Assembly (NCBI GenBank): GCA_002269645.1
Contig: NIVC01000032.1
Location: forward strand, 1,178,001-1,242,000
DNA: 64,000 nucleotides
Source: Macrostomum lignano
Lineage: Eukaryota
Direction: 5' to 3'
Below are positions 6,301 through 29,869 of this stretch, one piece after another (position 1 is the first letter of the stretch; the number at the start of each line of letters is the position of its first letter). The translations under genes were made by a program, and so were the position numbers. The notes beneath the pieces are model-generated. The model was not told the origin of the DNA and made no database searches. It was given only the letters and a program-made list of their open reading frames with translations.

Positions 6301-8720
6301 TGTTGGCACTCGGCTACCCACCTGCGAATGTCGGCACACATTAGTGGCCAGAAGAACCGATAGCTAATGAGCCGTTGCGTAGCTTTTCTGCCGGGGTGTG
6401 CGAACGAATCCAGCGAGTTGAACACCGCACGTCGAAGTACTTCAGGGACTACGGGACGCGGTTTAGTCTGCGAAGTCTCACAGCGTAATGGGTAGTTTTT
6501 AATCCCGATATCGAAGTTGCTGAATGCCGTCAGCAGACACGAGATAGCCGAGGAACTCCACAGACTTGCGGAAAAAGGCTCGATCGTCTCCGCAAGGTCT
6601 CCAGGAGCCGTCCTTTTTCTTCACCATGTGAAGCGGGGAAGCCCATGAACTGGCGGAGGGGCGGACGATGCCAAGGCGCAGGAGCTTGTCGAACTCCGCT
6701 TTTGCAACCGCGAACTTGGCCGGGGCAAGCGGTTGCGGCCGACAAAAAATGGTCGATGCCGAACCGACGTGGCGGGTGCTGCAGTGTAGTCCGGAGCTTC
6801 CAGAACTCGAGGTAACCGAGCCAGCGGTGTGGTCGGCTCAAGCAGCGTGGTGGCATTGATTTGAGGGACTGAATCACTAGAAGGACAGAGAGTCGCACGC
6901 AAAGATGTCACAGGGTCTTGAATGCGCCGTGACTTCAGGTCGATGAGGAGACCAAACTTGAGAAAGAAGTCTGCACCGAGGATGGGCGCAGTACTAGTAA
7001 CAATGAACGTCGCAGGATATGGTCTACGAAAGCCGGGGATAGCAAGTGTGACACAACATTGGCCGAAGGTTCGGATCTCACGGCCATCGATGCCGCAAAG
7101 TTTGACATGAGTGGGTGCGAGTAGATTTTGAGGAACAAACTGCAAAGGAAGAAGTGACCGTTCGGCGCCGGTGTCAACGATGAACGAAACGGGCGTACGA
7201 ACGACTTGGCAACGAAAAAGCAGCGTGGTGGCCTTTGACGGGTCGCGGCTCAGCCGATGCACGTGACCAACTAGTTTGACACCTGGTTTCGAGCGGTTTC
7301 GAGCCTGGCCACTGGCACCATGGTAGGCACGTGCGAGCATCGGCGGCGTAGTAGAGTAGAGATGACCGTTGCAGATCTTGGGTCATCGGCGTGAGTTCCA
7401 GTTGGAGCGCGAGTCGTTGGGCTTCCTGCTACGAAAAGAACCAGCGTCTCTTCTCGGGTGCTCTTGGCCGGTGGCAGAGGTGCGGTTTATAGAGGTGAAC
7501 GGGGTGGTGCAACCGGCGACAGCCAGCATGCTGTCGGCGATCTTCGCAAACGCGTCCAGCTCCGCCTGTTCGTGACCGACCAAGGCGGAGCGGATGTGGA
7601 TGGGCAGTGCAGTTAGGAGTCGAGACTTGATGATGCTGTCATCGACTTAAGCCTACTTCGCTGAATCGCCGCTTGATGTTGGTTACCAACTGAGATAGGC
7701 GGCGATCCCCACACACACAAAATTGACTATGGAATTTCTAATCGAGGAAACCGTTGACAGCATCACTTAGGCACACACTTAGAAAGGCTGTATAGGAAAT
7801 GGATAGGTTGGATATCTCAGACGTATCTTGGAGAATCCTGAGCGGAATGGAGATCTAGATGTCTTCTCTAAAGCAATAAATTTCTACATTTAGCTTTGCT
7901 TTGCTATCTGCAGCGCAATTTTTCAAATAGCTGTTAAAAGACTTCAACTATGCTAAAAGTTTATCCTTTGTAGCTACGGTATATGTAATGAAACATAGCA
8001 AGTACTACATGCAAGTTTTCCAAAAAATGTAGGATACGAGTTTCAACAGAAGCAGTTTAAACAGTAAATTGACACTTGCAACCAGAAACTTTGATGGCTG
8101 ATTGAGAAGCGTATAATCTTAAAAGTACAACTAATCTTAAAAGGCATTGCTTTCAGTGCAATTGCATGTAGATATGCTCTCACCTTGAATAGCAACATGT
8201 AGCGGATCATGTCAACGCGCATGATGTGATGCTGCAGAGACTTGTACTTGCCTAGCAACCCGGGGAACTGGGTAGCAACAAACGGTTCCAAGTCCTCGTC
8301 GCGCCACAACACGTAGGTCCAATCCGGATGAATTCTCTTCCAGGAGAGCAGCTGCTCGGCAAAGTAGCCGGATACGAGTTTGCTCTTCCACAGGATGTGA
8401 CGAATCTTCGGAATAGGGAACGCATCGCCAACCTGCCGCAGGTGCCTGACGTAGTCAGCTCGGCAGGTCTCCACCGAGCAAACCGAAGGCAGTCGAACGC
8501 TCAAATAAATAAATTTGTTTGCAGTGGAGTCGTTCCGGCTGTCAGACACGTGACTGTCAATCGCTGCAGGTCGCATCATTATCGGTGGCTCCAAGCCGTC
8601 ATGCTGAACTGCTGTCGTCAGTTCTTCCGGCGTGCATCTGAGTTTGCCATGGAAGCAGAGGATTGAAAACAGTGTTGCTATCGACAGGCCAGCGGTCAGT
8701 ACAGTTAATAGTTTATTCAT
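2232..8720 (-). CDS. Glycosyltransferase family 32 (DxD; MIPC-synthase/SUR1-like), type II membrane protein, 2 exons, about 396 aa
   Basis: Exon 1 8720-8184 (MNKLLTVLTAGLSIATLFSILCF anchor; IPKIRHILWKSK...WKRIHPDWTYVLWRDED...RVDMIRYMLLFK|gtgag). Exon 2 2885-2232 (ctcccgattcgcag|FGGVYADLD...EPDP...FLMSTPGHAF). The phase-0 join gives RYMLLFKFGGVYADLD. Confidence 0.9.
3435..4157. mobile_element. hAT-type MITE (outer element)
   Basis: Imperfect TIRs CAGTCGCGGATTTAG / CTGGATCCGCTACTG; exact 8-bp TSD CGCATGAT at 3427-3434 and 4158-4165. Confidence 0.85.
3577..4114. mobile_element. hAT-type MITE nested inside the previous element
   Basis: TIRs TGGGGATTGCAA / TTGCAATCCCTA; exact 8-bp TSD TCTGCGCC at 3569-3576 and 4115-4122; subterminal ATCCCGGGAT repeats at both ends. 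Confidence 0.85.
5020..7712 (-). mobile_element. Degenerate Ty3/Gypsy LTR retrotransposon inside the GT32 intron (5'-truncated; RT core and RNase H deleted)
   Basis: Gag remnant (GDRRLSQLVTNIKRR...DDSIIKSRLLTALP), protease (FIVDTGAERSLLP), RT start (KKKDGSWRPCGD) fused to RT end (FRKSVEFLGYLVSADGI), integrase Zn/core (HPGRKATQRL...RFFWP...RFTTVHIDLV...SDQGSQF) and GPY motif (LEAPYQGPY). A polypurine tract lies at about 5186-5198, followed by TGTAGC at 5180 as the likely 3' LTR start. The LTR's far boundary is approximate. Stops and frameshifts are present. Confidence 0.9.
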
Positions 8721-10451
8721 TTGTTCGGTATTCGGATCGATTAATAATATTCTGTTGGCAAATAGAGTCAAGCTTTCTTAGCCTAAAGGAAAATTTACCT
8801 AGCAGATTGGGAGACGCGACGGTGCAGAGATGCGGTGTCTGTGTGCTACTCTAGTAAGCCCACCCTCCGTCTGCACTGCAACTGGTCAACTTGATCTTCA
8901 GCGGTTGGCTGGGGCCCCTGCCATGGAGATCGGGGGAACGAGTTTTCAGACTTACAAAGGAAGCAGAAAGCCGCCATACTAGCTGTGTGTGAAAAGGAAG
9001 TAGCGCCTGAAAACGAAGGTTTGTACGAAGTGGGCATTCCAGATTGTCATTGAAATTCTCCATGGCTCGGGTTAAGAAAATTTCCTGCAACAGCTCTCCG
9101 TCTCCACTTATAGCATACGGGTCTCATGTGCCTCAGGCAGTTGTTGAGCGAGCGTCATTGCTCATACAAAAGAAAAAACTCATAAGCCTTACATGCGTGC
9201 TGTCGGATCTTATGGTTAGTTGGCCTTGCCAAGTCTCATCTTGCGTACGGTGAGCAGAGGCAACAGCCGTTGCAGTGAAGACTTATAATTGTTCGTCAAA
9301 CTGCACGCACGTACAGTAAACTTCGTGTATGGATATAAGGTTAGAAATCCGTAAGAATAGGCCACATAAAAAACCATAGTGAAATATTGCCAAAGCGAGG
9401 GGAGGTTGGTTACTCATTTATGTTAAAAACAGATTAATACCTGTTCTTTTCCAAGTGCTTTTTTCCGAACTTTAATTAGGAGAGATGCAATCAACGATTA
9501 TTATTATTATTCCTGTTGAAAATTATTTGCATATTTTCTTGGTTTTGATTTCGTTTTCCACAAAAATAACTTGAGTTACAGTATTTTTAAATGAGCTTTC
9601 AAAAAGAATGAAAGATAATGCTAGATGCACTACTTATTAGTACACACAATTGAGCTTCGGTTAAGGTCCTTAGGAAAATCATTAAAAAAATCTGAAAAAC
9701 AACTCGACAGAAGTTCGCTTTTTAGGTTTTTTTATGTTATTTTTCTTCCTGACATTTTTCGCTGTGCGGGAACCGAGCAACGCAGGCACACGAAATTGCA
9801 TGAGGACCACCTGCAGGCTAATTTTTTTGCACACCTTCAAAAACTGCCTTGGAGACCGTCGAGATATTCAAAAACTCTGCCAGAATGTCTGATTTTTCCC
9901 ATAAGCGCTAGTGTAATACCCCCTTCAATATACCCTTTGCACCAATAAGCACTGCGCCTCAGTGCGGTTTGCCATGCCTCAAGAGATCAGCTCTGGCTTC
10001 ACCCCAGCTGGAGCTGCTGGTCATTCAACAGATGACACCAGCTGTGACTATGGACACCTCCATGGATAGGAGGCCTTGTGGATTGACTGGGTTTGGTTGA
10101 CGCTTATTATCTGAAATTATCTGTAAAATTCCGGAGCATTATGTTACTTTATGCAATATGTTTGACAATTTAAAAGCATGCAAAAACACGAAACTAACAA
10201 TTGCTATTTAATTGAATTAACAATAGTTTCATAAGGTATGCAAATTAAAGTACATTATTCTGGTTCACTCGTAGGACCTAAAGGACTGAAAGTACAGCTA
10301 AAATAAAAAATTCATCGCTACTTATAATCATGCATTAACAAAGCCTAAGAAGTTAAAACACTCTACCTTTGCAATAGTTTATATGGTAAAGTACTATTTC
10401 TGAATAATATCGATTTATATTAATTGCATTTTCCTTCAGTTTTCAATTCGC

Positions 10452-13400
10452 TTATAGATCGATATTCTCCAACTTCTCCTTCACCCATCTGATCTTCTCC
10501 TCGTCCTGCGTCTCCATGGCAACGCGTCTCTCGTCCTTGATGGTCTCCATGTGACGCAGACTGAGCTCCACATGCTCGCGGCAGTCGCTATAGCGAGCCA
10601 GAGTGAGCAGCTCCTCCAAGTCCGGGTCTTCTTGCAGTTCCTCGAGCCACACATCTAATGCGATTGGCTGGAATGCTTGGAGCAGCTCAGCTTGAATACT
10701 CCAGCTCAGGCAGCGGAAGTTCACGTACAGGTGAGAGGAGAGAGGCTGCGACAGTCTGGCTGTGAGCAGAGTCTGCGTGAACTCGGGAAGGAATGGGAAG
10801 CGAGGCGGAGAGTCGCAGGGGAGGCAGAACCTCCACGCCCAGTCGCAATCAAGAGAGCACAAAGTACCAACTTCTTTTGGACTCAAACCGCATTTGACTC
10901 TGGTCTTCTGGAGCTCCATCGCGAGTTTCTCAGCCTCCTCAACTTCTCCGAACTTTAAATGCGACATGGCGGTCAGACACAGGGCTGCACACTTGCACCA
11001 CTGCTGCTTATTCAGGAGACTGAGTTGCCTCATCAGTGTGTCTCTGTTGCTCGATTCCAACTGCAACTCGCTCACACACTGGTGCACCACACTGTACACG
11101 TCAGCGAACTTATAATGCATATCAGGGTAAGAAGTACCTTCTCTGATCTTAGTCGCAGCGGGTGGCGCTGTCAGAGGCAGCAGGGTGAACGGGTGAAAGT
11201 AGAAGCTCTCTGACTGCAGAGGTCTCACGAGCCTCTTCAGCTGCTCGACCACTCCATTGATGTCGCTTCTCATCTCGTTCAGTCGGTTTCGAACCCTTGC
11301 CTTCGTGTTGTCGAAGTCGCCGCCGATTCCAGCGTTCTTGAAGTAAAGTGGAGCGTCGGGCATGAAGAAGTGCGGCATGCACTCATCGGGCGAGTTGCGT
11401 GAGCTGATGAAGTTCAGCATCATGTCGAGGGACTCCAAAAGCCGAGCGATCAGATTCTGAGGTTGCCAAGCCTCAGCCGAAGGGTCTGTGCCGTTCTTCT
11501 CCAGCATGAAGAACAACAGAGTCTTTGCATGGTAGGTCTTGAGTCCAGGTGTGTCCAGAGTGTGAGGCAAGTGTCGCTTGAAGATGAACTTGATCATTGT
11601 GAACAGCTGGCCCTGCACTGTGCCAAGGTCCGCCATGATCTCTTTCTCTTGGAATCCGAAACTCACTCTGAGCTCGTTGGTCGAGTTCGGTCTGGTCGCC
11701 CTCACGAGATGAACGTCGCGAAAGTATTTCAGAATTTTTCTGATCATGTCATCACAGAAACTGCTGCAGCACCAGATGGCGTAGCACGTGTCCTGTGCAG
11801 GCCGCACACCGCACGCCCTGGCGGTCACTGCAGGTTGGCTGCCTGCAGAGAGCAGAGAGCGGAGAGTGCATTAAAATAAAAGCAAATATGCGATAAACTG
11901 TAGCTCACTCACCTGCTCCCACTGCCACTTGTGCGTGACCCTCCTTGACTATCAGCTTTGTGGCATCTCTGCAGGAGCTTCGAGATCTGTTACAGCCTCC
12001 TTCCAGATGGAACTCCTGCCCAGCAACCAGCACAGTCCAGTCGATGTCCGAGTCTGCAGCTGTCCTGCCGTTTACTTGGGCCAGACTGTTGGCCCAGCCC
12101 TCTGCGTAGCTGCCCGTTATCTGCCTGTCATCCTGCGTGAGGACTTCAGCGACTCCTTTTAGCCAGTGAGCCAAAGTCTGTTGACAATTTGCTCTCTCCT
12201 TTGTAAATCCCGCCTCGCTGAGCAGTTGATGCAGTTCCTCACTCAGCTGTCTGTATCGCTGAGAACTGTCTGTGGGCCTGTGGGGCAAAATTCCAATACA
12301 GGAAACTGCAAATGAACTGCTCAACACACGTTGTCGAACCAAAAGGAATGAAACCCACTGGAGAAGAACCGAATCGCGAGTAGCGGCTGCCTGCTGGGTT
12401 TCTGAGCATCTGCAATGTACAATGGAACTCTTGTGTTTTAATGTTTCTGTGCCGTAAGTAAATTTAGGGCACGATGCAGGGTCGCATGCTACTTGCATTA
12501 ATCTACTTGGGTCCAGCAGGCGCAGCACCTCTCGCTGCTCGAGTCGCTCTGCCAGCTGTGCGCACGTCAGACCCCGACCGTCTCGATGACTCGCATCCGC
12601 TCCTCTGTCCATCAGAGCCTTGGCTGCTCGCACGTGACCGGCTTCGCACGCTCGCGACAGAGCAGTCCGACCCTGACTGTCTTCGGCACTCACTGACGCA
12701 CCGAGATCCAGCAGTTTCTCAATGAGCTCGTGATGACCTGCATCAGCTGCCAGCATGAGAGCAGTAGCTCCAGTGCTGTCTGACTGATCAACATGCTCTG
12801 AGCTGAATCTCTCATCATTGATCAGTGTGACAGCAAGAGCGACGTGTCTTTGAGAGATGGCGACACGAAGCAGCTGAGTGACCTGAGCTGGCTGCATTCG
12901 AGAGAGCGTGTCGGTGAGAACAGAGTTCCTGCCTTCGATGGCCATCGCTGCGGTGAAGCTGAGGATGGGGCTGAATTGGACGAGCCAGTCAGGCTCGAGG
13001 CCAAAATCCGACACAACATTTTCTCTTAGGCGAGAGCATGCAGCCAGTGTGCAACGAAATCGGAAGTCTTCGGTCTCAATACGAGTATCCATTTTGAGAC
13101 GAAGATAGAAATACTTCACCACTTCTAAGTGATCCTCGCTTGCAGCAGAAAGCGCAGCATTCATGCAGCACTGATCTATTACATTCTGATGGTCGGCTAT
13201 CGCTTGCACCAGGAATTGCACCACCTCCAAATGACCCTTGATTGCGGCAGATTGCAAAGCCTCTATGCAGCACTGATTTCTTACACTTTGGTTAGGCATG
13301 GCTTCCACCAGAAATTTAACCACTTCTAACTGGCCATGCTGGGCTGCCAAACGGCAGTTAGTTGCGCAGAACATTGTCTTACTTTGCTCAGTTTGCAGAT

Positions 13401-13507
13401 GCTGAAATCGAGCTTTCACAGTCGCCACTATTCCGGTGGTGACTGCCTCATCAATGCTTGGCGTTTGATCCATCCTCTTTATGATTTCGCTACTGAACTT
13501 CTGGGCC
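10452..13507 (-). CDS. Ankyrin-repeat + cGAS-like receptor (Mab-21/cGLR nucleotidyltransferase) with helical C-terminal tail
   Basis: ANK repeats (GHLEVVQFLV, GATALMLAADAGHHELIEKLLDLGA, GRTALSRACEAGHVRAAKALMDRGA). NTase motifs ITGSYAEGW and DSDIDW, third Asp in QDTCYA. Mab-21 C-lobe ELRVSFGFQEKEIM, LKTYHAKTLLFFMLEK, MPHFFMP. An 85-nt intron lies at 11912-11828 (gcag|gtgagt...ctgcag|tg). A further intron probably lies within about 12500-12280. Acceptor at 13507 and in-frame ATG at 13473. Confidence 0.88.
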
Positions 13508-14279
13508 CTGCAGAGATAAAAATGGTTTTATTTATCCATTAAAAGGTATTGGTTTGATTGCTTTCCGGGGTGTTCGTTGCGGCCGTCGATTGGTTGGGTA
13601 GCTGTGTAGACAGCTGGGTAAAATCATACCGCAATGTGCTACTTAGAGTAACACTCTAAGAAAAGTCAATCTACACTGTAAATCTGCAACCTATTTTTGA
13701 AATGAGTAATTCACAAACAGGGTGACTTACAAAATTTTACTGTAAATATAAGAGAAAATCGAACGCAACCAAGAAGACGCCCTTCAGGAGGATCAATTAC
13801 AGATACTAGAGACTCAGAGAAGTCATGCTTTAATTTTGCTCTTACTTTGAGTTCAATTAATCTTCTAAACTCTTGTTTTTAGCATTACTCTATCGCTCAT
13901 ATGAAAGTTTGTTGAGTCTGTTTGCTAACCTCATCACTTTGCTAGGAGTCGAGACTTTATTTAGCATGCGTACTTTGTATTTGCGCTGTCAAACTTTCAA
14001 GAATATAGCGCGCATCAGCCGTGACTCAGCTGCAAAATTTGTAGTTGTGCACTGTACTATGGCATGCGAGTAATCTTAACTTAGATTCATAATCTGGAGA
14101 CGCTTTTCAAGCAGTTCTTGAATAACGAATCACGTGTTCGCTTTAGCATACCTGCACTGATAAAAATAGCAATATAGGAAAGTGAGAGTAGAAGTGAAGG
14201 AGACACGTGGGTTGAGATAGAACAAATTGATAAGGACAGTTAAGAGAGCACAGGCGCTCACCTTTACTGTTGCTGTCTT

Positions 14280-16345
14280 AGTCACCGGTGCTTCTCCTTG
14301 CTGCTGTCTCAGTCACCGGTGCTTCTGCTTGCTGCTGTCTCAGTCACCGGAACTTCTCCTTGCTGCTGTCTCAGTCACCGGAACCTCTCCTTGCTGCTGT
14401 CTCAGTCACCGGAACTTCTCCTTGCTGCTATCTATGTCACCGGAACTTCTCCTTGCTGCTGTCTCTGTCACCTGAACTTCTCCTTGCTGCTATCTCAGTC
14501 ACCGGAACTTCTCCTTGCTGCTGTCTCTGTCACCTGAACTTCTCCTTGCTGCTATCTCAGTCACCGGAACTTCTCCTTGCTGCTATCTCAGTCACCGGAA
14601 CTTCTCCTTGCTGCTATCTCAGTCACCGGAACTTCTCCTTGCTGCTATCTCAGTCACCGGAACTTCTCCTTGCTGCTGTTTCAGTCACAGGTGCTTTCTC
14701 CTTGCTGCTGTCTCTGTCACCTGAACTTCTCCTTGCTGCTGTCTCTGTCACCTGAACTTCTCCTTGCTGCTATCTCAGTCACCGGAACTTCTCCTTGCTG
14801 CTATCTCAGTCACCGGAACTTCTCCTTGCTGCTGTCTCTGTCACCTGAACTTCTCCTTGCTGCTGTCTCTGTCACCTGAACTTCTCCTTGCTGCTATCTC
14901 AGTCACCGGAACTTCTCCTTGCTGCTATCTCAGTCACCGGAACTTCTCCTTGCTGCTGTCTCAGTCACCGGAACTTCTCCTTGCTGCTATCTCAGTCACC
15001 GGAACTTCTCCTTGCTGCTATCTCAGTCACCGGAACTTCTCCTTGCTGCTATCTCAGTCACCGGAACTTCTCCTTGCTGCTATCTCAGTCACCGGAACTT
15101 CTCCTTGCTGCTATCTCAGTCACCGGAACTTCTCCTTGCTGCTGTCTCTGTCACCTGAACTTCTCCTTGCTGCTATCTCAGTCACCGGAACTTCTCCTTG
15201 CTGCTGTCTCAGTCACCGGAACTTCTCCTTGCTGCTATCTCAGTCACCGGAACTTCTCCTTGCTGCTGTCTCAGTCACCGGAACTTCTCCTTGCTGCTGT
15301 CTCTGTCACCGGAACTTCTCCTTGCTGCTGTCTCAGTCACCGGAACTTCTCCTTGCTGCTGTCTCAGTCACCGGAACTTCTCCTTGCTGCTGTCTCAGTC
15401 ACCGGAACTTCTCCTTGCTGCTATCTCAGTCACCGGAACTTCTCCTTGCTGCTGTCTCAGTCACCGGAACTTCTCCTTGCTGCTATCTCAGTCACCGGAA
15501 CTTCTCCTTGCTGCTGTCTCAGTCACCGGAACTTCTCCTTGCTGCTGTCTCAGTCACAGGTGCTTTCTCCTTGCTGCTGTCTCAGTTACCGGAGCTTCTC
15601 CTTGCTGCAGTCTCAGTTACCGGAGCTTCTCCTTGCTGCAGTCTCAGTCTCCGGTGCTTCTCCTTGCTGCAGTCTCAGTCACCGGAGCTTCTTCTTGCTG
15701 CTGTCTCAGTCACCGGTGCTTTCTCCTTGCTGCAGTCTCAGTCACCGGTGCTTTCTCCTTGCTGCTGTCTCAGTCGCCAGAGCTTCTCCTTGCTGCAGTC
15801 TCAGTCGCCAGAGCTTCTCCTTGCTGCAGTCTCAGTCACCGGTGCTTCTCCTTGCTGCAGTCTCAGTCACCGGAACTTCTCCTTGCTGCTGTCTCAGTCA
15901 CCGGTGCTTCTCCTTGCTGCAGTCTCAGTCACCGGTGCTTCTCCTTGCTGCAGTCTCAGTCACCGGTGCTTCTCCTTGCTGCAGTCTCAGTCACCGGTGC
16001 TTCTCTTTGCTGCAGTCTCAGTCACCGGTGCTTCTCCTTGCTGCTGTCTCAGTCACCGGTGCTTCTCCTTGCTGCAGTCTCAGTCACCGGTGCTTTTTCC
16101 TTGCTGCTGTCTCAGTCACCGGTGTTTTCTCCTTGCTGCTGTCTCAGTCACCGGTGCTTTCTCCTTGCTGCTGTCTCAGTCACAGGTGCTTTCTCCTTGC
16201 TGCTGTCTCAGTCACCGGTGTTTTCTCCTTGCTGCTGTCTCAGTCACAGGTGCTTTCTCCTTGCTGCTATCTCAGTCACAGGTGCTTTCTCCTTGCTGCT
16301 GTCTCAGTCACAGGTGCTTTCTCCTTGCTACTGACTCAGTCGCAG
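14280..16345. repeat. 31/32-bp minisatellite (CAGTCACCGGAACTTCTCCTTGCTGCTGTCT)
   Basis: Direct tandem array; 31-bp units dominate on the left and 32-bp units appear on the right. Confidence 0.95.
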
Positions 16346-17301
16346 CTGATGCAGACCTAAATTGGTAGTTTAACTTCCTGCAGACTGCAGAGTCAGATAA
16401 AATTGCTGTTTACGATAGCTACAAGCGTAAATGGCTTTATGTGCAACGCGCGTAGCTCCTATCTGCTTCTGCAAGCGACCCGCAGTTCTCTAAGTGAATG
16501 TACATATGTACAAACGCGTGCAAATATGCGCAAAACTCTCGTATATGGAGGGGAAGGCTATGTACAGAGGACGGAAAAGGGGGTAGAGAATGAAACGCCT
16601 GTATTGTGATACGGATAGGAACATAATTCATGCACGGCTAGGCAAGGACAGCAACTGTAAAAGTCTATAATTGAAATTTGAATCTAATTTTACTTTCCAA
16701 CCGAGGGTTTTCTAAATATTTACACCTTTTCTGTTCAATTTCAACAAAGCTCACATTCAATTTCGGCATATTTTTGGCGCGCTGTTTTTAGTGTACTGTA
16801 TTAAGCTTCAACAGACCCTCTTAAACTAACAACAAATACGGTAACTGACTGTGGGAGACAGAGCCCGCCTTCACAATGCACACGAGAACGGGCAGAATTG
16901 CCATCTGGCGCAACTCATAAAGCCACCGATCTGTCTCTGCCCTCGCACCTTTATGTTTAATTTTATTTGTTAAAATTGAATGCAGCATGCCGAAATTGAA
17001 TGGGTCCTTGCCGAATTCCAATGACGGTTCAAGTAGCTAAATATAAAATGATGAAATCGAATATGAGCCTGCCGAAACTGAATGACAGTTTAGTTGAAAT
17101 CGAACGGTAAAAGGTTTACTTAACTTTGGGTAGCTTCTCGCTCACTATTAAGTACCTTCAGTCGTCGCCATGACTGAAGTTCAACTGATTTTAACTGCGC
17201 ATTGTTTTTTATCCTTGCGTCAACTAACAATCGATTTATTTTTGTCAACAATTTTTATAACGCTTAGATTACGCGACCTCCATTTCAATTTGTTTCACAA
17301 T

Positions 17302-17821: not shown

Positions 17822-18607
17822 TCAACGCGGTGTCATGATATGCCGGCCCCCATCTACGGGAACGATGGTGCCAGTGATGAAGCTCGCAGCATCCGAGGCT
17901 AGAAAGGCCACCACAGTGGCCACCTCCTCCGGTTGGCCGGCCCTGCCCAGAGCGTGCGTGGTCTTGGACCGCTCCAGGAAGGCGGCGTAGGCTTCATCGG
18001 ACATGCCCGATCGCTTGTGAATCTCCGTGACAATCACGCCAGGATTCACCGAGTTCACGCGAACACTCTTCGACGCTAAGTCGAGCGCCGTACACCTGGT
18101 GAACTGGTCCAAAGAGGCTTTAGTCATGCAGTAGGTCATGACGTTTGGAAAGGCGCAATTACCAGCTACGGAGGACACGTTAACAACGCTGCCCCGACCG
18201 GAGGCGATCAGATGCGGCACGGCGGCTTGAGTCAGCTCGATCGCTGTGTCAACATTCAATCGGCGAAGTCCTTCAGCAGCGCTAGACGAATAAGTCTTAA
18301 CGGTGTCGTTGAGAAGAGCTCCAGCAGCGTTGACAAGAATGTGCAGGCGGCCGAACGCGTTGATGGCTGCTGGCACAACTTTGGCCAAATCAGCTGGTTG
18401 AAGCAGATCAGCAGAGAGAGTTGCTGCTGAGCTGTCCGACCCGACCTGCTTGCAGGCGGCCAGAGTCTCGTCCAGAGCGGTCTGGCTGCGGCCAACAAGC
18501 AGGACTCGAGCGCCGAGGCGAACCAGCTGGACAGCCACGGCTCGACCGATGCCAGAACTGGCCCCGGTTACTATGGCAACGCGATCGGTTAGGGATAGGG
18601 AGTCCAT
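17822..18607 (-). CDS. Classical short-chain dehydrogenase/reductase (FabG-like), intronless, about 261 aa
   Basis: TGASSGIG NAD(P)-binding motif, VNAAG, NVSS, YCMTK catalytic motif, VNSVNPG and DGG tail; ATG at 18607. Confidence 0.93.
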   Translation of the reverse strand: MDSLSLTDRVAIVTGASSGIGRAVAVQLVRLGARVLLVGRSQTALDETLAACKQVGSDSSAATLSADLLQPADLAKVVPAAINAFGRLHILVNAAGALLNDTVKTYSSSAAEGLRRLNVDTAIELTQAAVPHLIASGRGSVVNVSSVAGNCAFPNVMTYCMTKASLDQFTRCTALDLASKSVRVNSVNPGVIVTEIHKRSGMSDEAYAAFLERSKTTHALGRAGQPEEVATVVAFLASDAASFITGTIVPVDGGRHIMTPR

Positions 18608-18648
18608 GAATGAGCGAGGCGTATACTTGTACTTTTCAATGTGCGCTA

Positions 18649-18789
18649 GTTGCCATGGCGATACTGCTAAGGTGCCTATTCTAGAATCTCGAATTTGTAG
18701 GCCAGAAATCAACAGCCTAGAGACGATAGGGGGCCTATAGATAACTCGGCCCGGATTATCTTATCAATTACGCTAGTTGCTATAGCAAC
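18649..18789. promoter_or_regulatory. Two RFX X-box motifs upstream of the SDR ATG
   Basis: GTTGCCATGGCGAT at 18649-18662 and the palindrome GTTGCTATAGCAAC at 18776-18789; both are preceded by CGCTA. Confidence 0.6.
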
Positions 18790-19316: not shown

Positions 19317-20811
19317 TCATTGATTGTCGTCTTCTTCACTTTCTTCCTCCTCCTCTCCGTCATCACTTGAGCCACCATCGGACTCTCCCAGCCGGTGCCG
19401 GATCCAAGCCGAAGCCTGAGCGGCAGTCTCAAACTGTTCCGCCTGCAACAGTCGCAGAAACGTTCGCTTGTCCCGTTCGCGCAGCTGCTGCACCTCCGAG
19501 TCGAGGCTGGCAGCTGCGGCCGCCGCCGCTCCGGCTGACTGATTTGCCAGCGATGGCGCCTCTGCCGGGGTCAGCTCTCGCTGCTGGGCGCACTTCTGAC
19601 ATTCGGCTCGATCACGGGCGCAGCTCTGACACACCTGGGAGAGAGAGATTTATTAATTATTAATAGTTGAATAATTTAATGACGAATGTTCATAGAATAC
19701 AATAGTAAACGGGTCATAGTGCTACTGGTCATACCCAAAGAAACTGGTCATAGTGCTACTGGTCATACCCAAAGAAACTGGTCATAGTGCTACTAGTCAT
19801 ACCCAAAGAAACTGGTCATAGTGCTACTAGTCATGCCCATAGAAACTGGTCATAGTGCTACTAGTCATGCCCATAGAAACTGGTCATAGTGCTACTAGTC
19901 ATGCCCATAGAAACTGGTCATAGTGCTACTAGTCATGCCCATAGAAACTGGTCATAGTGCTACTAGTCATGATCATAGAAACTGGTCATAGTGCTACTAG
20001 TCATGCCCATAGAAACTGGTCATAGTGCTACTGGTCATACCCAAAGAAACTGGTCATAGTGCTACTAGTCATACCCAAAGAAACTGGTCATAGTGCTACT
20101 AGTCATGCCCATAGAAACTGGTCATTGTGCTACTAGTCATGCCCATAGAAACTGGTCATAGTGCTACTAGTCATGCCCATAGAAACTGGTCATAGTGCTA
20201 CTAGTCATGCCCATAGAAACTGGTCATAGTGCTACTAGTCATGCCCATAGAAACTGGTCATAGTGCTACTAGTCATGATCATAGAAACTGGTCATAGTGC
20301 TACTAGTCATGCCCATAGAAACTGGTCATAGTGCTACTAGTCATGCCCATAGAAACTGGTCATTGTGCTACTAGTCATGCCCATAAAAACTGGTCATTGT
20401 GCTACTAGTCATGCCCATAGAAACTGGTCATTGTGCTACTAGTCATGCCCATAAAAACTGGTCATAGTGTGGAAGCTCATTCACTATACCAAAATAGATG
20501 ACTAAATCAAAAGCTTGACAAGCAACCAATAAAATCCGTACACATTTTCAACTCACAGTGAAATAAGCGCTCTGTATGCACCGTTTCTCGCAACGCACGC
20601 ACTTCCTTGGCTGAGTAGGCAGCTTGTACTTTTTATACTTCACCTTCCAGTCTAAAATATCTTTGCAGCGCTGACAGGTGAGGCCGCCAAAATTCAGTTG
20701 ATTGACAGTTTTTGTACGCTGAGAAGTGTCATGGATGCTGTTCTTGAATGCATGACTATTCTGATGTTTCTGAGGCCTACTTCGATTGGCGTTGCCCCGT
20801 TGCGAGCTCAT
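19317..20811 (-). CDS. C9orf85: C9orf85 homolog (DUF2039), 2 exons, about 190 aa
   Basis: Exon 1 20811-20557 (MSSQRGNANRSRPQKHQN..AFKN...CQRCKDILDWKVKYKKYK...KCVRC...|gtgagt). Exon 2 19634-19317 (ctcccag|VCQSCA...acidic tail). Phase-0 join. Confidence 0.92.
19710..20470. repeat. 34-bp minisatellite in the C9orf85 intron
   Basis: About 22 copies of AAACTGGTCATAGTGCTACTAGTCATGCCCATAG. Confidence 0.95.
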
Positions 20812-24505: not shown

Positions 24506-27500
24506 TCATTCCTTATTCTTTCGCTTCTTATTATCCGACAATCGTCGTTTTTTAATCTTCTTCCCATCGGCGGCATTGAAATCCTCTCGAGGTCGTTTCA
24601 ATGCCTTGACCTTTCTTGTCTGCAGTTTGTCCAACTCTTGCCGGCCGACGTGTACACGACCGAGACGATTGCCCAGACCATCGTCCGGCACAATGTTCTT
24701 GATCTTCTTGATCGTGGCAACTTTCGGCTGACGGCGAGCCTGCTTAGACTGCTCCGGCGTTGCCAACTTGTGCCTGCGCAGTCGCAAACCGAAACGCGGA
24801 CCCATCTCGGACAGCTCGACTCGGGGAATTTTCGAACCGGAGCTCTTCAGCAGGATGCGATAGGATCTGCGGGTTCCGTTTGGGATGGTTGATCTGATGA
24901 CTGATTCCCAGTCACTTGCGTCGCCTCAAGAGTCGTAGGTATTTTTTATTAGAGGCAGGGGGGTTGTGTGCACCTTGGCGCACTTTAAGCGACATAGGCA
25001 CACAACCAGCGAGAGGCATTGCTGCCAATTCCGCCGACTCCCCTGAGCAGGCACACAAGCGCGCGGATGCGTGCGCAGTCATACGCACAGGCACACACTT
25101 ACACAGGAGTGTACAGCGGCCCTAACTTTATATTATCGTTAGGCATGTACACTTCACTGCGCCTTGGGGGGTTGGCTCTCAAGGCCGTTAATTGCACGAG
25201 CAGAGCCAAGCCGAGATTCCAATTCAGCCCCAAATTAATGTGACTGCACTTGGAATCGAGCCTGGGTCGCTGGCACACCAGAGCAGCGGCGCTACCGCTG
25301 GGCTACGGCCCCCCAAGAGTCGTAGGTAACACAGGTAAAAAATAGGAAAGAAGTTCCTCTAGAAGACTCTAAAACAACAAGATGTCACGGTACAAGTCGC
25401 CAAAAAAATTCCTCCAAGAGTCAACTTGAGACTATTTGTGAATTTGGACAATCAAAACGGGACGCCATAGACATTCAAGCCAGGCCACAAATCTCACCCT
25501 AGTCATGAACTTTAGCAGTTAAGCAAAGTCTACTGAGGGAGGCTTGGCCATAGACTATAACTTTGGACATTCAAAAAGCCTTTCAATGGCGCCAGCAATT
25601 CCTGTAGCAGATCGCCAGCGGCTGATTGATGCGATTGAGCAAGGGTCATCCATTGCAGGAGCTGCAAGAATCTTGCGGTAACGGATACTTTGTTCACATT
25701 TAAATATTCCAGTTAGCCCTGAGATTTCATTAAATTGGGCAAATTCCCGTTTTGAACGGCTTTTTTTCATTTTCTCAAAACGACAAGGGCCGTTTTAGCG
25801 AAAGCAGAGCCAATCTACGAGTCTAGTATTGTTAATTCAATGGTCTCGTACTCTAATGTCTGCTTAAATTAATGCCCAAAGAATTTTAAACAACACTGCG
25901 TGCGTTTGTAAAGCCTATGTACAATTCGATCGATAATTTCTGTTTTCAAGTTGGTTTTTCTCGCCGGCCAATAGAAAAGCCGCGCATATATTATGCTAGC
26001 CTGAAATTAAGCTCTCCTCGCGCGCCCACCCCAGCCCGCTCTTTATCAGTCCTGTCTGGGTGGGGCGCCCGGGGTTAGACCCTTGTTTGCTGTTTACCCG
26101 TCTCTCCGCTTCGCTCCGCCACAGTTCTAAGTCACACCTCTGCCAAGTCTCAGTCACGCCACCGCCACCGTCAATTCTCGACCACGCCACCACTACCGTC
26201 TGTAAAGGGTTCTCGCTACGAGTACCGCCACCACACGATCACTGCCATCACATCGTCGCCATTGCCTCAGGCTCATCAACTCGCTCTATCATCTATCATC
26301 TATCTTGTTGTTGCGCAGCCGCCCAGTGCATTCCTTACGGATTCAGCAAATACTCAGGCCCATCTCTATTAACTACCCAGACGGAATTGATAATAACGAG
26401 CCCTAACTATCCACTCATACGGGTACAATAAATGAGAACTGCGGCCACCGCCCGCATCATTCGTCACTATCATCAAGTGCTACCGCTACAAAGTTTGCCT
26501 CTGCTGTATTCGTATTCGTCAGTTAATTTCGAGTCTGCCGGTTAATCGTCACAAGTCGCCCCCCTGAGTCGCTTTCTTTTTGGGAATATTCTGGAATATC
26601 ATTAAGAAATTAGGAGTCGCATCAATGATATGCGTCACAAACGCCTCACCTGACAAGAATCTGGCCATCGCAATAGGAGAATTGAATCAGCTGCTCAAGG
26701 CCTTGGAGACGAATCTTCTCAACCCGAGGACCTTGGAACATGTCCAGCAGCAGGTTTTTAATAGCCATCAGAGTTGGGTCGCTGTCAAACTCTTCGCCCT
26801 AAAAATTATTGTTTTCAGGTGTAGGGTGGATTGTTGAAATCGCATTCAAGAGATTTAATCAAATCAGTCATAGCACACAATTTGTCTAAATCATAGCCTA
26901 GGATGTCTAGATGCCAAGATTAATGGCTAAGATGACCAAAACATATTTAAATACATAGATCAGCCATCCCATCTAGATTTCACTCATTAGATGTCTAGAT
27001 GACAGCAATCACAATGTCTAGATGACAGCAATCACAATGTCTAGATGATAGCAATCACAATGTCTAGATGACAGCAATCACAATGTCTAGATGACAGCAA
27101 TCACAATGTCTAGATGACAGCAATCACAATGTCTAGATGATAGCAATCACAATGTCTAGATGTCAGCAATCACAATGTCTAGATGACAGCAATCACAATG
27201 TCTAGATGACAGCAATCACAATGTCTAGATGTCAGCAATCACAATGTCTAGATGACAGCAATCACAATGTCTAGATGATAGCAATCACAATGTCTAGATG
27301 TCAGCAATCACAATGTCTAGATGACAGCAATCACAATGTCTAGATGATAGCAATCACAATGTCTAGATGTCAGCAATCACAATGTCTAGATGACAGCAAT
27401 CACAATGTCTAGATGACAGCAATCACAATGTCTAGATGTCAGCAATCACAATGTCTAGATGACAGCAATCGCAATGTCTAGATGTCAGCAATCACAATGT

Positions 27501-29869
27501 CTAGATGATCACAATGTCTAGATGATCACAATGTCTAGATGATCACAATGTCTAGATGATCACAATGTCTAGATGACAGCAATCACAATGTCTAGATGTC
27601 AGCAATCACAATGTCTAGATGATCACAATGTCTAGATGATCACAATGTCTAGATGATCACAATGTCTAGATGACAGCAATCACAATGTCTAGATGATCAC
27701 AATGTCTAGATGTCAGCAATCACAATGTCTAGATGACAGCAATCACAATGTCTAGATGTCAGCAATCACAATGTCTAGATGATCAAAATGTCTAGATGAC
27801 AGCAATCACAATGTCTAGATGTCAGCAATCACAATGTCTAGATGATCACAATGTCTAGATGACAGCAATCACAATGTCTAGATGTCAGCAATCACAATAT
27901 GCAGATGACAGCAATCACAATGCCTACATGACAGCAATCACAATGTCTAGATGACAGCAATCACAATGTCTAGATGAGAGCAATCACAATGTCTAGATGA
28001 CAGCAATCACAATGTCTAGATGACAGCAATCACAATGTCTAGATGACAGCAATCACAATGTCTAGACGACAGCAATCACAATGTCTAGATGTCAGCAATC
28101 ACAATGCCTAGATGACAGCAATCACAATGCCTAGATGACAGCAATCACAATGCCTAGATGACAGCAATCACAATGCCTAGATGACAGTAATCACAATGCC
28201 TAGATGACAGCAATCACAATGCCTAGATGACAGTAATCACAATGCCTAGATGATATCAATCAGATATCTAGATGACAGCAATCACAATGTCTAGATGACA
28301 GCAATCACAATGCCTAGATGATATCAATCAGATGTCTAGATGACAGCAATCACAATGTCTAGATGATCACAATGTCTAGATGTCAGCAATCACAATGTCT
28401 AGATGACAGCAATCACAATGTCTAGATGTCAGCAATCACAATGTCTAGATGATCAAAATGTCTAGATGACAGCAATCACAATGTCTAGATGTCAGCAATC
28501 ACAATGTCTAGATGATCACAATGTCTAGATGACAGCAATCACAATGTCTAGATGTCAGCAATCACAATATGCAGATGACAGCAATCACAATGCCTACATG
28601 ACAGCAATCACAATGTCTAGATGACAGCAATCACAATGTCTAGATGAGAGCAATCACAATGTCTAGATGACAGCAATCACAATGTCTAGATGACAGCAAT
28701 CACAATGTCTAGATGACAGCAATCACAATGTCTAGACGACAGCAATCACAATGTCTAGATGTCAGCAATCACAATGCCTAGATGACAGCAATCACAATGC
28801 CTAGATGACAGCAATCACAATGCCTAGATGACAGCAATCACAATGCCTAGATGACAGCAATCACAATGCCTAGATGACAGCAATCACAATGCCTAGATGA
28901 CAGCAATCACAATGCCTAGATGACAGCAATCACAATGCCTAGATGACAGCAATCACAATGCCTAGATGATATCAATCAGATGCCTAGATGACAGCAATCA
29001 CAATGCCTAGATGACAGCAATCACAATGCCTAGATGACAGCAATCACAATGTCTAGATGACAGCAATCACAATGCCTAGATGACAGCAATCACAATGCCT
29101 AGATGACAGCAATCACAATGCCTAGATGACAGCAATCACAATGCCTAGATGACAGCAATCACAATGCCTAGATGACAGCAATCACAATGCCTAGATGACA
29201 GCAATCACAATGTCTAGATGATATCAATCAGATGTCTAGATGACAGCAATCACAATGTCTAGATGTCAGCAATCACAATGCCTAGATGACAGCAATCACA
29301 ATGCCTAGATGACAGTAATCACACGTCTAGATTACAGTAGCCACATGGCTAGATCACACTTATTACAGTCATCCTATGTCTAAACCAAACTACAATAAAA
29401 TAGTATTTAAATAATGTTCAACAATTAGACTCACCTGAAAGCTAAGACATGGCTTAGTGCCAACAGGCACCTTGGCAACGGGAAAAGTACACAATGGCTG
29501 GTAGCCTTCAACGCCAAACTCAATCATATCCAGCAGCTGGTAGTTAAACAGCCTGCCTAGCACCAGATTATTCGGTCGCTTTTTCGAATGGCTTGCAAAA
29601 GCGAATAGCGAGCAGTCGTACTTTCGACTCATCTTTTCAACAAAGCTAATCTCTTCGAATGGTAAAATTGGATTGCGGCGTTTCAGCATCAGAGCGTGCG
29701 GCTTTTTTAAGCTGTACAAATCTTTCAGACAGGAACCGATGGCTTCGCTAGTATTGCCGCCGCGGATGAGTAAGCACGACTTTGTGTTTTCTATCACCTT
29801 CTCTTCTCGCCTGGCTAATGCTCGCTTGCCGGCTTGAGTCTTCGGCTTGATCACGCTGTTTGAGGCCAT
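24506..29869 (-). CDS. RPF2: Ribosome production factor 2 (Brix domain), 3 exons, about 314 aa
   Basis: Exon 1 29869-29435 (KPKTQAGKRAL..RE.KVIEN...SHSKKRPNNLVLGR...DMIEFG...|gtgagt). Exon 2 26798-26650 (GEEFD...KNLLLDMFQG...GLEQLI..|gtgagg). Exon 3 24866-24506 (RSYRILLKSSGSKIPRVELSEMGP...KNI). Phases are consistent (435+149+361 nt). Confidence 0.95.
24942..25313 (-). mobile_element. tRNA-derived SINE, family A copy 2, with 15-bp TSD
   Basis: Head GGGGCCGTAGCCCAGCGG (A box) and GGCTCGATTCC (B box), A-rich tail; exact TSD CAAGAGTCGTAGGTA at 24927-24941 and 25314-25328. Confidence 0.9.
26990..29335. repeat. 23-bp minisatellite (with a 17-bp variant) in RPF2 intron 1
   Basis: TCTAGATGACAGCAATCACAATG repeated about 100 times; shorter variant TCTAGATGATCACAATG. 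Confidence 0.97.

What the first reader, a model, noticed from the sequence alone, without database searches (positions are those of the whole stretch)
10452..13507. Intact ankyrin-repeat cGAS-like receptor (ANK-cGLR): candidate innate-immune second-messenger synthase
Seen: about 8 ankyrin-like repeats fused to a Mab-21/cGAS-fold NTase that keeps G-S-x-x-E-G, D-S-D-I-D and a third Asp (QDTC), followed by a TPR-like helical tail. Established: animal cGLRs make cyclic dinucleotides for STING and often carry accessory sensing domains. Seen and inferred: the segment between the third Asp and VHLV is unusually short and lacks the W..R...WP motif common in invertebrate cGLRs. That suggests a lineage-specific subfamily that may sense protein ligands through ANK repeats, or make an atypical product.
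Basis: partly seen in the sequence, partly recalled or inferred. Interest (0 to 1): 0.75.

Follow-up and report, generated by a model that had tools for sequence, protein, structure and literature searches.

The report
Flatworm ankyrin-repeat cGAS-like receptor gene
This is an intact gene of the flatworm Macrostomum lignano for an ankyrin-repeat protein with a cGAS-like enzyme domain, but a 2023 survey already listed and tested this exact protein, so the gene is real and not new.

Summary
On the minus strand, 13473..10452, lies a three-exon gene. Its 954-aa product is 100% identical to GenBank PAA93208.1 (BOX15_Mlig001946g3, Macrostomum lignano).

Anatomy:
- An N-terminal ankyrin solenoid, which is exon 1.
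- A disordered linker.
- A cGAS/Mab-21-fold nucleotidyltransferase domain.
- A conserved all-helical tail of about 235 aa.

The enzyme domain alone models very confidently (pLDDT 92.7). Its best matches among solved structures are cGAS, Sp-cGLR1, MB21D2 and MAB21L1. The active-site motif ITGS-X20-DIDW-X57-QDT fits the published cGLR definition. These residues are kept in 33-38 of 38 Macrostomum paralogues that are as little as 24% identical.

The reading "ANK-cGLR, lineage-specific subfamily" is therefore supported. It is not new. Li et al. 2023 list this protein as sample #92 of their 140-enzyme cGLR screen. They expressed it without the ankyrin part, and it is not among their 15 named active enzymes. 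They also describe ANK-cGLR fusions as a class.

Product, ligand and downstream receptor remain unknown. I could not test whether M. lignano has STING. "TPR-like" was not shown for the tail. Interest is modest.

The parts
13474..13510 (-). Short 5' untranslated stretch (13507..13474) preceded by a CAG splice acceptor (13510..13508). This could be a 5'-UTR intron acceptor or a spliced-leader trans-splice site.
   Evidence: Sequence read. M. lignano trans-splices 38.8% of its genes (PMC5730564). The assignment is an inference.
12497..13473 (-). Exon 1: start codon and the whole ankyrin-repeat module (aa 1-325). It has three N-terminal 33-aa ANK-like repeats (aa ~41-121), degenerate middle repeats, and three canonical ANK repeats (aa ~235-320).
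   Evidence: Pfam Ank_2 E=1e-24. Repeat HMM. AlphaFold helix hairpins at pLDDT 80-95. Coordinates.
12410..12496 (-). Intron 1: 87 nt, GC-AG (donor GCAAGT, acceptor TTGCAG), in frame and without a stop codon. Retention would add 29 aa of linker.
   Evidence: Removing it gives exact identity to PAA93208.1.
11913..12409 (-). Exon 2: disordered linker (aa 326-372), the long N-terminal spine helices of the NTase domain, the ITGS motif (G425-S426 at 12114..12109), and the metal-binding D447-I-D449 (12048..12040).
11843..11912 (-). Intron 2: 70 nt, GT-AG, phase 1. It splits codon G492 inside the NTase core.
   Evidence: tblastn of the spliced protein against the window.
10452..11842 (-). Exon 3: the rest of the NTase core with the third catalytic Asp (D509, 11792..11790), the Mab-21 C-terminal helix bundle (Pfam PF20266, aa 583-657, 11570..11346), the helical tail (aa 719-954, 11162..10455) and the stop codon (10454..10452).
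11163..12270 (-). cGAS-like nucleotidyltransferase domain (aa 373-718); the span includes intron 2.
   Evidence: AlphaFold2 model pLDDT 92.7, pTM 0.93. Foldseek against PDB: cGAS 4o69 E=4e-9, TM 0.58; Sp-cGLR1 8gjy; MB21D2 7lt1; MAB21L1 5eom.
10455..11162 (-). Family-specific all-helical C-terminal domain (aa 719-954). It contains the near-invariant block RFPFLPEFTQ..TARLSQP.SSHLYVNFRCLSWS.
   Evidence: Its HMM is found directly after the NTase domain in every M. lignano subfamily examined. About 11 helices at pLDDT 60-85. No Pfam or PDB sequence match.

Best explanation
**Shown.** This is the intact, transcribed Macrostomum lignano gene BOX15_Mlig001946g3. Its 954-aa protein has four parts:
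- an ankyrin-repeat solenoid (exon 1);
- a flexible linker;
- a cGAS/Mab-21-fold nucleotidyltransferase with a complete GS / D-x-D / D active site;
- a conserved helical tail found only in this family.

It is one of dozens of Macrostomum paralogues. They share the enzyme-plus-tail core and differ mainly in the number of N-terminal ankyrin-like repeats.

**Inferred.** It works as a cGAS-like receptor. The enzyme is held inactive until a ligand engages the protein. The ligand is more likely a protein or another non-nucleic-acid molecule than dsDNA or dsRNA, and is probably read by the ankyrin array and/or the tail. The two aspartates D447 and D449, with D509, then bind two Mg2+ ions and join NTPs into a cyclic di- or oligonucleotide. 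That product activates a downstream receptor, which is not identified in this species.
For: **Identity and transcription**
- Exact identity to PAA93208.1.
- Location NIVC01000032.1 of GCA_002269645.1.
- GenBank models for this assembly come from an RNA-seq-guided transcriptome (PMC5730564).

**Fold**
- Domain model pLDDT 92.7, pTM 0.93.
- The top 50 PDB matches are all cGAS, cGLR, MB21D2 or MAB21L1, at probability 1.0 over about 390 aligned columns.
- Pfam Mab-21_C E=1e-7.
- hhalign against cGAS/cGLRs gives 97.7% probability.

**Active site**
- I-T-G-S, X20, D-I-D-W, X57, Q-D-T fits the published h[QT]GS-X8-20-[DE]h[DE]h-X50-90-h[DE]h rule.
- The residues sit at the start of strands 75-89 and 135-144 of the model, as expected for a pol-beta-type NTase.
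- Conservation in a 38-sequence family alignment with 39% mean column identity: G 38/38, S 37/38, D447 36/38, D449 35/38, D509 33/38.

**Ligand class**
- The cGAS zinc thumb is absent.
- NTase pI is 7.25 and whole-protein pI 5.87, against about 9 for cGAS and dsRNA/dsDNA-responsive cGLRs. Li et al. state that nucleic-acid-responsive cGLRs have high pI.

**Receptor-like family features**
- 98 representatives at E<=1e-10, all those with names from M. lignano.
- Ankyrin-like repeat number ranges from 2 to 20.
- Li et al. 2023 independently classed this protein as a cGLR.
Against: - No enzymatic activity is known. Li et al. purified aa ~370 onward (no ankyrin part) and screened it with pooled nucleic-acid ligands. 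Its row carries no entry in the column naming the 15 active enzymes. The figure with the raw TLC is not held, so weak activity cannot be excluded.
- The N-terminal NTase core is not recognised by Pfam PF03281 or by profile-profile alignment. It is recognised only by motif and predicted structure.
- TM-scores to cGAS are moderate (0.5-0.6).
- The positions flanking the third Asp are Q and T, not hydrophobic.
- Other flatworms lack both cGAS and STING. Whether M. lignano has STING was not tested.
- No expression or infection data were examined.
Confidence: 0.6

Rival explanations
1. Catalytically silent scaffold. The Mab-21 fold is kept for structure or for nucleotide binding only, as is suspected for MAB21L1. 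The protein acts through ankyrin- and tail-mediated protein interactions and makes no second messenger.
For: It is not among the 15 active enzymes of the published screen. MAB21L1 is among the structural matches. The tail block is more strongly conserved than much of the enzyme domain.
Against: The GS and all three acidic residues are kept in 33-38 of 38 paralogues down to 24% identity, which is hard to explain without catalysis. The screen used a construct without the ankyrin module and only nucleic-acid ligands, so a negative result there is weak evidence.
Confidence: 0.2
2. Active nucleotidyltransferase with different chemistry. It makes linear 2'-5' oligonucleotides as OAS does, or transfers a nucleotide onto a protein or RNA, rather than making a cyclic dinucleotide for STING.
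For: The segment after the third Asp is about 20 aa shorter than in other subfamilies and lacks the WP..W..R.R..WP motif. STING is absent from the other flatworms examined. OAS and cGLRs share the fold (established knowledge).
Against: The best structural matches are cGAS and cGLRs. Nothing in the sequence points specifically to OAS-type or protein-modifying activity.
Confidence: 0.12
3. Non-immune role. It is an expanded flatworm gene family used in development, the germline or stem-cell biology, with the cGLR fold co-opted.
For: No infection or expression data were examined. Mab-21 proteins have developmental roles. Many M. lignano gene families are inflated by hidden polyploidy.
Against: The family shows large lineage-specific expansion and variable repeat arrays. 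Relatives are predicted to be fused to caspase, kinase or RING domains. These are typical of defence receptors, not of conserved developmental genes.
Confidence: 0.06
4. Pseudogene or annotation artefact. Two unrelated reading frames lie next to each other by chance or through mis-assembly.
For: None beyond the split into two frames in the raw sequence.
Against: Splice sites are canonical and the frame is preserved. There are no internal stops over 954 codons. The product is identical to a transcript-derived GenBank protein. Dozens of paralogues have the same architecture.
Confidence: 0.02

Closest known systems
PAA93208.1 / BOX15_Mlig001946g3, sample #92 in the cGLR screen of Li et al. 2023 (PMC9980059; published in Cell 2023)
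   Same: It is the same protein: 954/954 residues are identical. The printed 399 aa of construct #92 are an exact substring of the window protein.
   Different: Nothing differs in sequence. The published construct starts at RPTDSS and therefore lacks the ankyrin module. No product or ligand is reported for it.
ANK-cGLR fusions as a class (Li et al. 2023 Fig. 1C and S2; e.g. Stylophora pistillata ANK-cGLRs)
   Same: Ankyrin repeats are fused to a cGLR enzyme domain. The authors propose them to be protein- or ligand-interaction modules.
   Different: The Macrostomum family carries an extra conserved helical tail of about 235 aa, has a variable 33-aa repeat array, and has no detectable full-length relatives outside the genus. 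I found no paper in the held library that functionally characterises any ANK-cGLR.
Sp-cGLR1 (PDB 8GJY) and other invertebrate cGLRs such as Cv-cGLR1
   Same: Same fold (Foldseek E=6e-8). Sp-cGLR1 is the best sequence match among solved structures (E=6e-4, C-terminal domain). Same GS / DxD / D motif.
   Different: Those enzymes are single-domain, basic, and activated by dsRNA or dsDNA. This protein is near-neutral to acidic, carries ANK and tail domains, lacks the WP..W..R.R..WP segment, and has no shown activity.
Vertebrate cGAS
   Same: The closest solved structures (4o69 E=4e-9, TM 0.58). The catalytic motif pattern and the C-terminal helix bundle align.
   Different: About 14% identity. There is no zinc thumb and no basic N-terminus. 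The GS-to-DxD loop is 8 residues longer, and the segment after the third Asp is shorter.
MAB21L1/2 (developmental Mab-21 proteins; PDB 5EOG, 5EOM)
   Same: Same fold and the same Pfam C-terminal domain.
   Different: MAB21L1 is a conserved single-domain protein of about 360 aa with no shown catalysis. This is a multi-domain member of a large lineage-specific expansion with a fully kept catalytic triad. TM-score to MAB21L1 (0.48) is lower than to cGAS (0.58).

Membership tests
cGLR (cGAS-like receptor), criteria of Li et al. 2023 | Active-site motif h[QT]GS - X8-20 - [DE]h[DE]h - X50-90 - h[DE]h | tested here: met
   I423-T-G-S426, 20 residues, D447-I-D449-W, 57 residues, Q-D509-T (rule quoted). 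The GS-to-DxD spacing is at the upper limit. The residues flanking the third Asp are Q and T rather than hydrophobic. The columns are conserved in 33-38 of 38 paralogues.
cGLR (cGAS-like receptor), criteria of Li et al. 2023 | [quoted passage not shown] | tested here: inconclusive
   C-terminal half: Pfam Mab-21_C E=1e-7 and hhalign 97.7%, E=1e-12. N-terminal core: no Pfam PF03281 hit, and hhalign did not align it. It is recognisable only by motif and predicted structure.
cGLR (cGAS-like receptor), criteria of Li et al. 2023 | [quoted passage not shown] | tested here: met
   AlphaFold2 pLDDT 92.7, pTM 0.93. Foldseek against PDB: the top 50 hits are all cGAS, Sp-cGLR1, MB21D2 or MAB21L1, probability 1.0, TM 0.48-0.59, about 350-400 aligned columns.
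cGLR (cGAS-like receptor), functional definition | Ligand-dependent synthesis of a nucleotide second messenger | not testable with these tools
   From the literature only: the ANK-less construct #92 was screened with pooled nucleic acids and is not among the 15 named active enzymes. The raw TLC figure is not held.
cGLR-STING pathway | A STING (or other) receptor for the product encoded in the same genome | not tested
   M. lignano is absent from Li et al. Table S5. Other flatworms lack STING. No tool here can search the M. lignano proteome by taxon.
Vertebrate-type cGAS (dsDNA sensor) | Zinc-thumb insertion H-X5-CC-X6-C and a basic DNA-binding surface | tested here: not met
   hhalign shows a gap where cGAS has KTCCENKEEKCC. 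NTase pI is 7.25 against about 9.0 for cGAS.
MAB21L1/2 orthologue | Conserved single-domain protein of about 360 aa, one or few copies per genome | tested here: not met
   The protein is 954 aa with ANK and tail domains. The family has dozens of paralogues restricted to Macrostomum. The structural match to MAB21L1 is weaker than to cGAS.
Ankyrin-repeat proteins | Tandem 33-aa helix-turn-helix repeats matching the Pfam Ank models | tested here: met
   Ank_2 E=1e-24, Ank_4 E=2e-18, Ank E=7e-18. About 10 helix hairpins with a 33-35-aa period in aa 1-325 at pLDDT 80-95.
TPR-repeat proteins (for the C-terminal tail) | 34-aa TPR consensus repeats | tested here: not met
   No TPR family at E<=1 in Pfam and no sequence match among solved structures. 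The model shows about 11 helices, but the fold of the tail alone was not compared with solved structures.

The most novel reading that the evidence does not exclude
The Macrostomum ANK-cGLR family could be a modular immune-receptor repertoire that senses proteins rather than nucleic acids and signals without STING. This would be in a phylum otherwise thought to have lost cGLR-STING signalling.

Features that fit this reading:
- dozens of paralogues with a constant enzyme-plus-tail core;
- a variable array of 2 to 20 ankyrin-like repeats encoded on a separate exon;
- some members predicted to be fused to kinase, caspase or RING domains.

On this reading, the ANK-less construct appeared inactive in the 2023 screen because the sensor module and the right ligand were missing.
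Probability: 0.15. Interest if true: 0.7.

Novelty: already known. Interest (0 to 1): 0.3.

Why it matters
For the scan, this finding is a correct call of a gene already in the literature. The protein is in GenBank, and the Kranzusch laboratory's 2023 cGLR catalogue lists it and cloned it for the screen. It should not be counted as a discovery.

Several questions remain open and are mildly interesting:
- No ankyrin-fused cGLR has a known ligand or product.
- Macrostomum is the exception among flatworms in keeping, and greatly expanding, cGLR-type genes, while planarians, flukes and tapeworms lack both cGAS and STING.
- If the ankyrin arrays prove to be the sensing part and the genome lacks STING, this family would show a protein-sensing, STING-independent branch of cGLR signalling.
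- M. lignano offers transgenesis (PMC5730564), so the question can be tested.

Tried and rejected
1. **Pfam PF03281 (Mab-21 NTase core).** No hit, even on the spliced protein. Only Mab-21_C was found, so the fold claim rests on structure prediction.
2. **Sequence and profile search of PDB**. Only weak C-terminal matches (best E=6e-4 to Sp-cGLR1).
3. **hhalign of the family against a cGAS/cGLR alignment**. Only the C-terminal half aligned. Equivalence of the catalytic residues therefore rests on the motif pattern and the predicted strands. I had no access to model coordinates to measure the geometry.
4. **Full-length AlphaFold run**. It gave a good ankyrin solenoid and a moderate tail, but a poor enzyme domain (pLDDT 25-50), because its alignment held only close paralogues. 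I relied on the domain-only model for the enzyme domain.
5. **Bacterial promoter/terminator scan**. It is irrelevant to a eukaryotic gene and I disregarded it.
6. **Literature search for the locus tag Mlig001946**. Nothing found.
7. **STING in M. lignano.** It could not be tested. The species is missing from Li et al. Table S5. A protein search with a STING query lists only the best 120 hits, with no taxon filter, so I ran no further search on it.
8. **More copies in the window.** tblastn finds only this gene.
9. **Pseudogene or chance-ORF reading.** Rejected.
Full report
**What is in the sequence**

On the minus strand there are two long open frames: 13473..11905 (522 aa) and 11828..10452 (458 aa). 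They are joined in frame by a 70-nt intron with GT-AG ends (11912..11843, phase 1, polypyrimidine tract before the acceptor), which gives a 983-aa reading.

The best database hit has one further gap relative to this reading. That gap corresponds to an 87-nt intron with a GC donor (GCAAGT) and a TTGCAG acceptor at 12496..12410. Its length is a multiple of three and it has no stop codon, so the frame stays open whether or not it is removed.

With both introns removed, the product is 954 aa and identical at every residue to PAA93208.1, hypothetical protein BOX15_Mlig001946g3 of Macrostomum lignano. The collection places that protein on contig NIVC01000032.1 of assembly GCA_002269645.1, in a gene of 3,022 nt, which is the length seen here.

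GenBank gene models for this assembly were derived from a genome-guided RNA-seq transcriptome (Wudarski et al. 2017, PMC5730564). The model joining the two halves therefore rests on transcript evidence.

There is only one copy of the gene in the window.

**Anatomy of the protein**

- **Ankyrin module, aa 1-325 (exon 1).** Pfam gives Ank_2 at E=1e-24 and related models. The full-length AlphaFold model shows about ten helix hairpins with a 33-35-aa period at pLDDT 80-95. The module has three parts:
  - three copies of a family-specific 33-aa ankyrin-like repeat;
  - a degenerate middle part;
  - three canonical repeats.
- **Linker, aa 326-372.** Predicted disordered.
- **Enzyme domain, aa 373-718.**
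- **Tail, aa 719-954.** About eleven helices at pLDDT 60-85. An HMM of it is found directly after the enzyme domain in every M. lignano subfamily examined. It has no Pfam family (no TPR model at E<=1) and no sequence relative among solved structures. The tail is real, helical and conserved, but "TPR-like" was not shown.

**Is the enzyme domain a cGAS-like nucleotidyltransferase?**

By sequence alone, only the C-terminal half is recognisable:
- Pfam Mab-21_C, E=1e-7;
- best solved-structure hit Sp-cGLR1 8GJY, E=6e-4;
- hhalign of a 38-sequence family alignment against cGAS/cGLR sequences taken from Li et al. Table S3: 97.7% probability, E=1e-12, covering CHLV..LRVSFSF.EK through HFF.PD.

I therefore built a family alignment from an exhaustive profile search and modelled the domain. 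The model is very confident (pLDDT 92.7, pTM 0.93).

Foldseek against the PDB returns only cGAS, Sp-cGLR1, MB21D2 and MAB21L1 in the top 50. Probability is 1.0, about 350-400 columns align, and TM-scores are 0.48-0.59 (best 4o69, E=4e-9).

The motif reads I-T-G-S426, twenty residues, D447-I-D449-W, fifty-seven residues, Q-D509-T. This fits the rule Li et al. used to define cGLRs. The GS follows the first strand. The Asp pair opens strand 75-89 of the model and the third Asp lies in strand 135-144. This is the pol-beta-type arrangement.

In the 38-sequence alignment (mean column identity 39%, members down to 24% identical) these residues are kept as follows: G 38/38, S 37/38, D447 36/38, D449 35/38, D509 33/38. 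That argues for selection on catalysis.

**Differences from known members**

- The cGAS zinc thumb is absent.
- The GS-to-DxD loop is at the upper limit of the published range.
- The segment between the third Asp and VHLV is 26 aa. It is about 48 aa in other Macrostomum subfamilies. It lacks the WP..W..R.R..WP motif visible in the bivalve and coral cGLRs of Li et al. Table S3.
- The enzyme domain has pI 7.25 and the whole protein 5.87, against about 9 for cGAS and two cnidarian cGLRs. Li et al. state that dsDNA- and dsRNA-responsive cGLRs have higher pI. This makes a nucleic-acid ligand less likely, but that is an inference.

**The family**

A profile search of 1.84 billion representative proteins found 378 hits at E<=1e-3, 98 at E<=1e-10 and 69 at E<=1e-30. 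Every hit covering the whole domain that carried a name was from M. lignano.

Outside the genus, only the C-terminal half matches. The best named case is a protein of the annelid Lamellibrachia satsuma, at E=2e-13.

The number of N-terminal 33-aa repeats ranges from 2 to 20 among paralogues. Some predicted relatives carry further domains:
- a C-terminal protein kinase (PAA66964.1);
- a C-terminal caspase domain (PAA93319.1);
- WSC and RING domains.

For the caspase case, the exons are collinear on one contig across three introns. I did not verify the transcript. Counts are inflated by two annotation sets and by the known redundancy of this assembly, so "dozens" is the safe statement.

**What is already known**

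Li et al. [quoted passage not shown]

Sample #92 is PAA93208.1. The printed 399 residues of its construct are an exact substring of the window protein, starting at RPTDSS. The construct therefore lacked the ankyrin module. Sample #93 is the paralogue PAA68676.1.

The screen used a pool of nucleic-acid ligands.

The same paper states three relevant things:
- some cGLRs are fused to TPR or ankyrin modules;
- "most platyhelminthes" have no cGLR other than Mab21-like proteins;
- 87% of cGLRs are single-domain.

Other work reports loss of cGAS and STING in Schistosoma and in the planarian Schmidtea. M. lignano is not in the table of cGLR and STING counts per species. I found no paper that characterises any ANK-cGLR or mentions this locus tag.

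**Mechanism**

Shown:
- an intact, transcript-supported gene;
- an ankyrin array;
- a cGAS-fold domain with a complete and conserved catalytic motif;
- a conserved tail;
- a genus-specific expansion with variable repeat number.

Inferred: a ligand-gated nucleotidyltransferase whose ankyrin array and/or tail read a non-nucleic-acid ligand, and whose product acts on an unidentified receptor. I put this at about 0.6.

The main rival is a catalytically silent scaffold (0.2). It is supported by the absence of reported activity and weakened by conservation of the catalytic residues. Altered chemistry (0.12), a non-immune role (0.06) and an artefact (0.02) follow.

**Verdict**

- The finding is an already catalogued cGLR, so novelty is "already known".
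- Interest is 0.3, kept above the floor for two reasons: no ankyrin-fused cGLR has a known ligand, and Macrostomum is an unexplained exception among flatworms.

Noticed in passing
window 12497-13473 (exon 1); relatives P0041, P0042, P0046, P0010: Exon 1 ends exactly where the ankyrin module ends. Its C-terminal canonical-repeat part (28% of the query, 48-53% identity) also occurs in M. lignano proteins that pair it with a protein kinase and no Mab-21 domain. This suggests the sensor-like module has been shuffled between effector enzymes.
   Followed up: partly
relatives P0126 (PAA93319.1; locus L002 3001-11307), P0010 (PAA66964.1), P0121: Predicted family members carry extra effector-type domains: a C-terminal caspase (Peptidase_C14, E=3e-27), a C-terminal protein kinase, or WSC plus RING. 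For the caspase case, the exons are collinear on one contig across introns of about 65-600 nt. Transcript continuity was not checked, so a merged gene model is possible.
   Followed up: partly
paralogues P0002-P0037 compared with window aa 41-121: The copy number of the N-terminal 33-aa ankyrin-like repeat (NRDRCCIEAA..AA..G..EVVKFLV.Q..DQ) ranges from 2 to 20 among paralogues whose enzyme-plus-tail core is 60-80% identical. The window gene has 3.
   Followed up: partly
window 12410-12496: The first intron has a GC donor, is 87 nt long (a multiple of three) and contains no stop codon. Retention would simply insert 29 residues into the disordered linker, so it is a candidate alternative isoform.
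   Followed up: partly
window 13508-13510: A polypyrimidine tract and CAG acceptor lie 35 nt upstream of the start codon. This could be a spliced-leader trans-splice site, since 38.8% of M. lignano genes are trans-spliced.
   Followed up: no
window 14271-16341, 19702-20469, 26991-29358, 35154-38993, 40430-41598, 62540-63270: The window holds many long minisatellite arrays with periods of 21-34 nt and up to 183 copies. They create long spurious open reading frames on both strands, for example 14764-16368 and 35116-38937.
   Followed up: no
window 17822-18712 (-), 58826-59950 (-), 32588-33181 (-), 54333-55184 (+), 8043-8771 (-): The neighbouring coding pieces are unrelated to immunity. They are a short-chain dehydrogenase (E=9e-53), a rhodopsin-family 7TM receptor (E=1e-10), an aminotransferase class-V fragment, a fucose pyrophosphorylase fragment, and a weak glycosyltransferase match. 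No second cGLR lies nearby.
   Followed up: partly
window 6621-7340 (-): An open frame with a weak retroviral-type aspartyl protease match (RVP, E=9e-5). It is probably a remnant of an LTR retroelement in the host genome.
   Followed up: no
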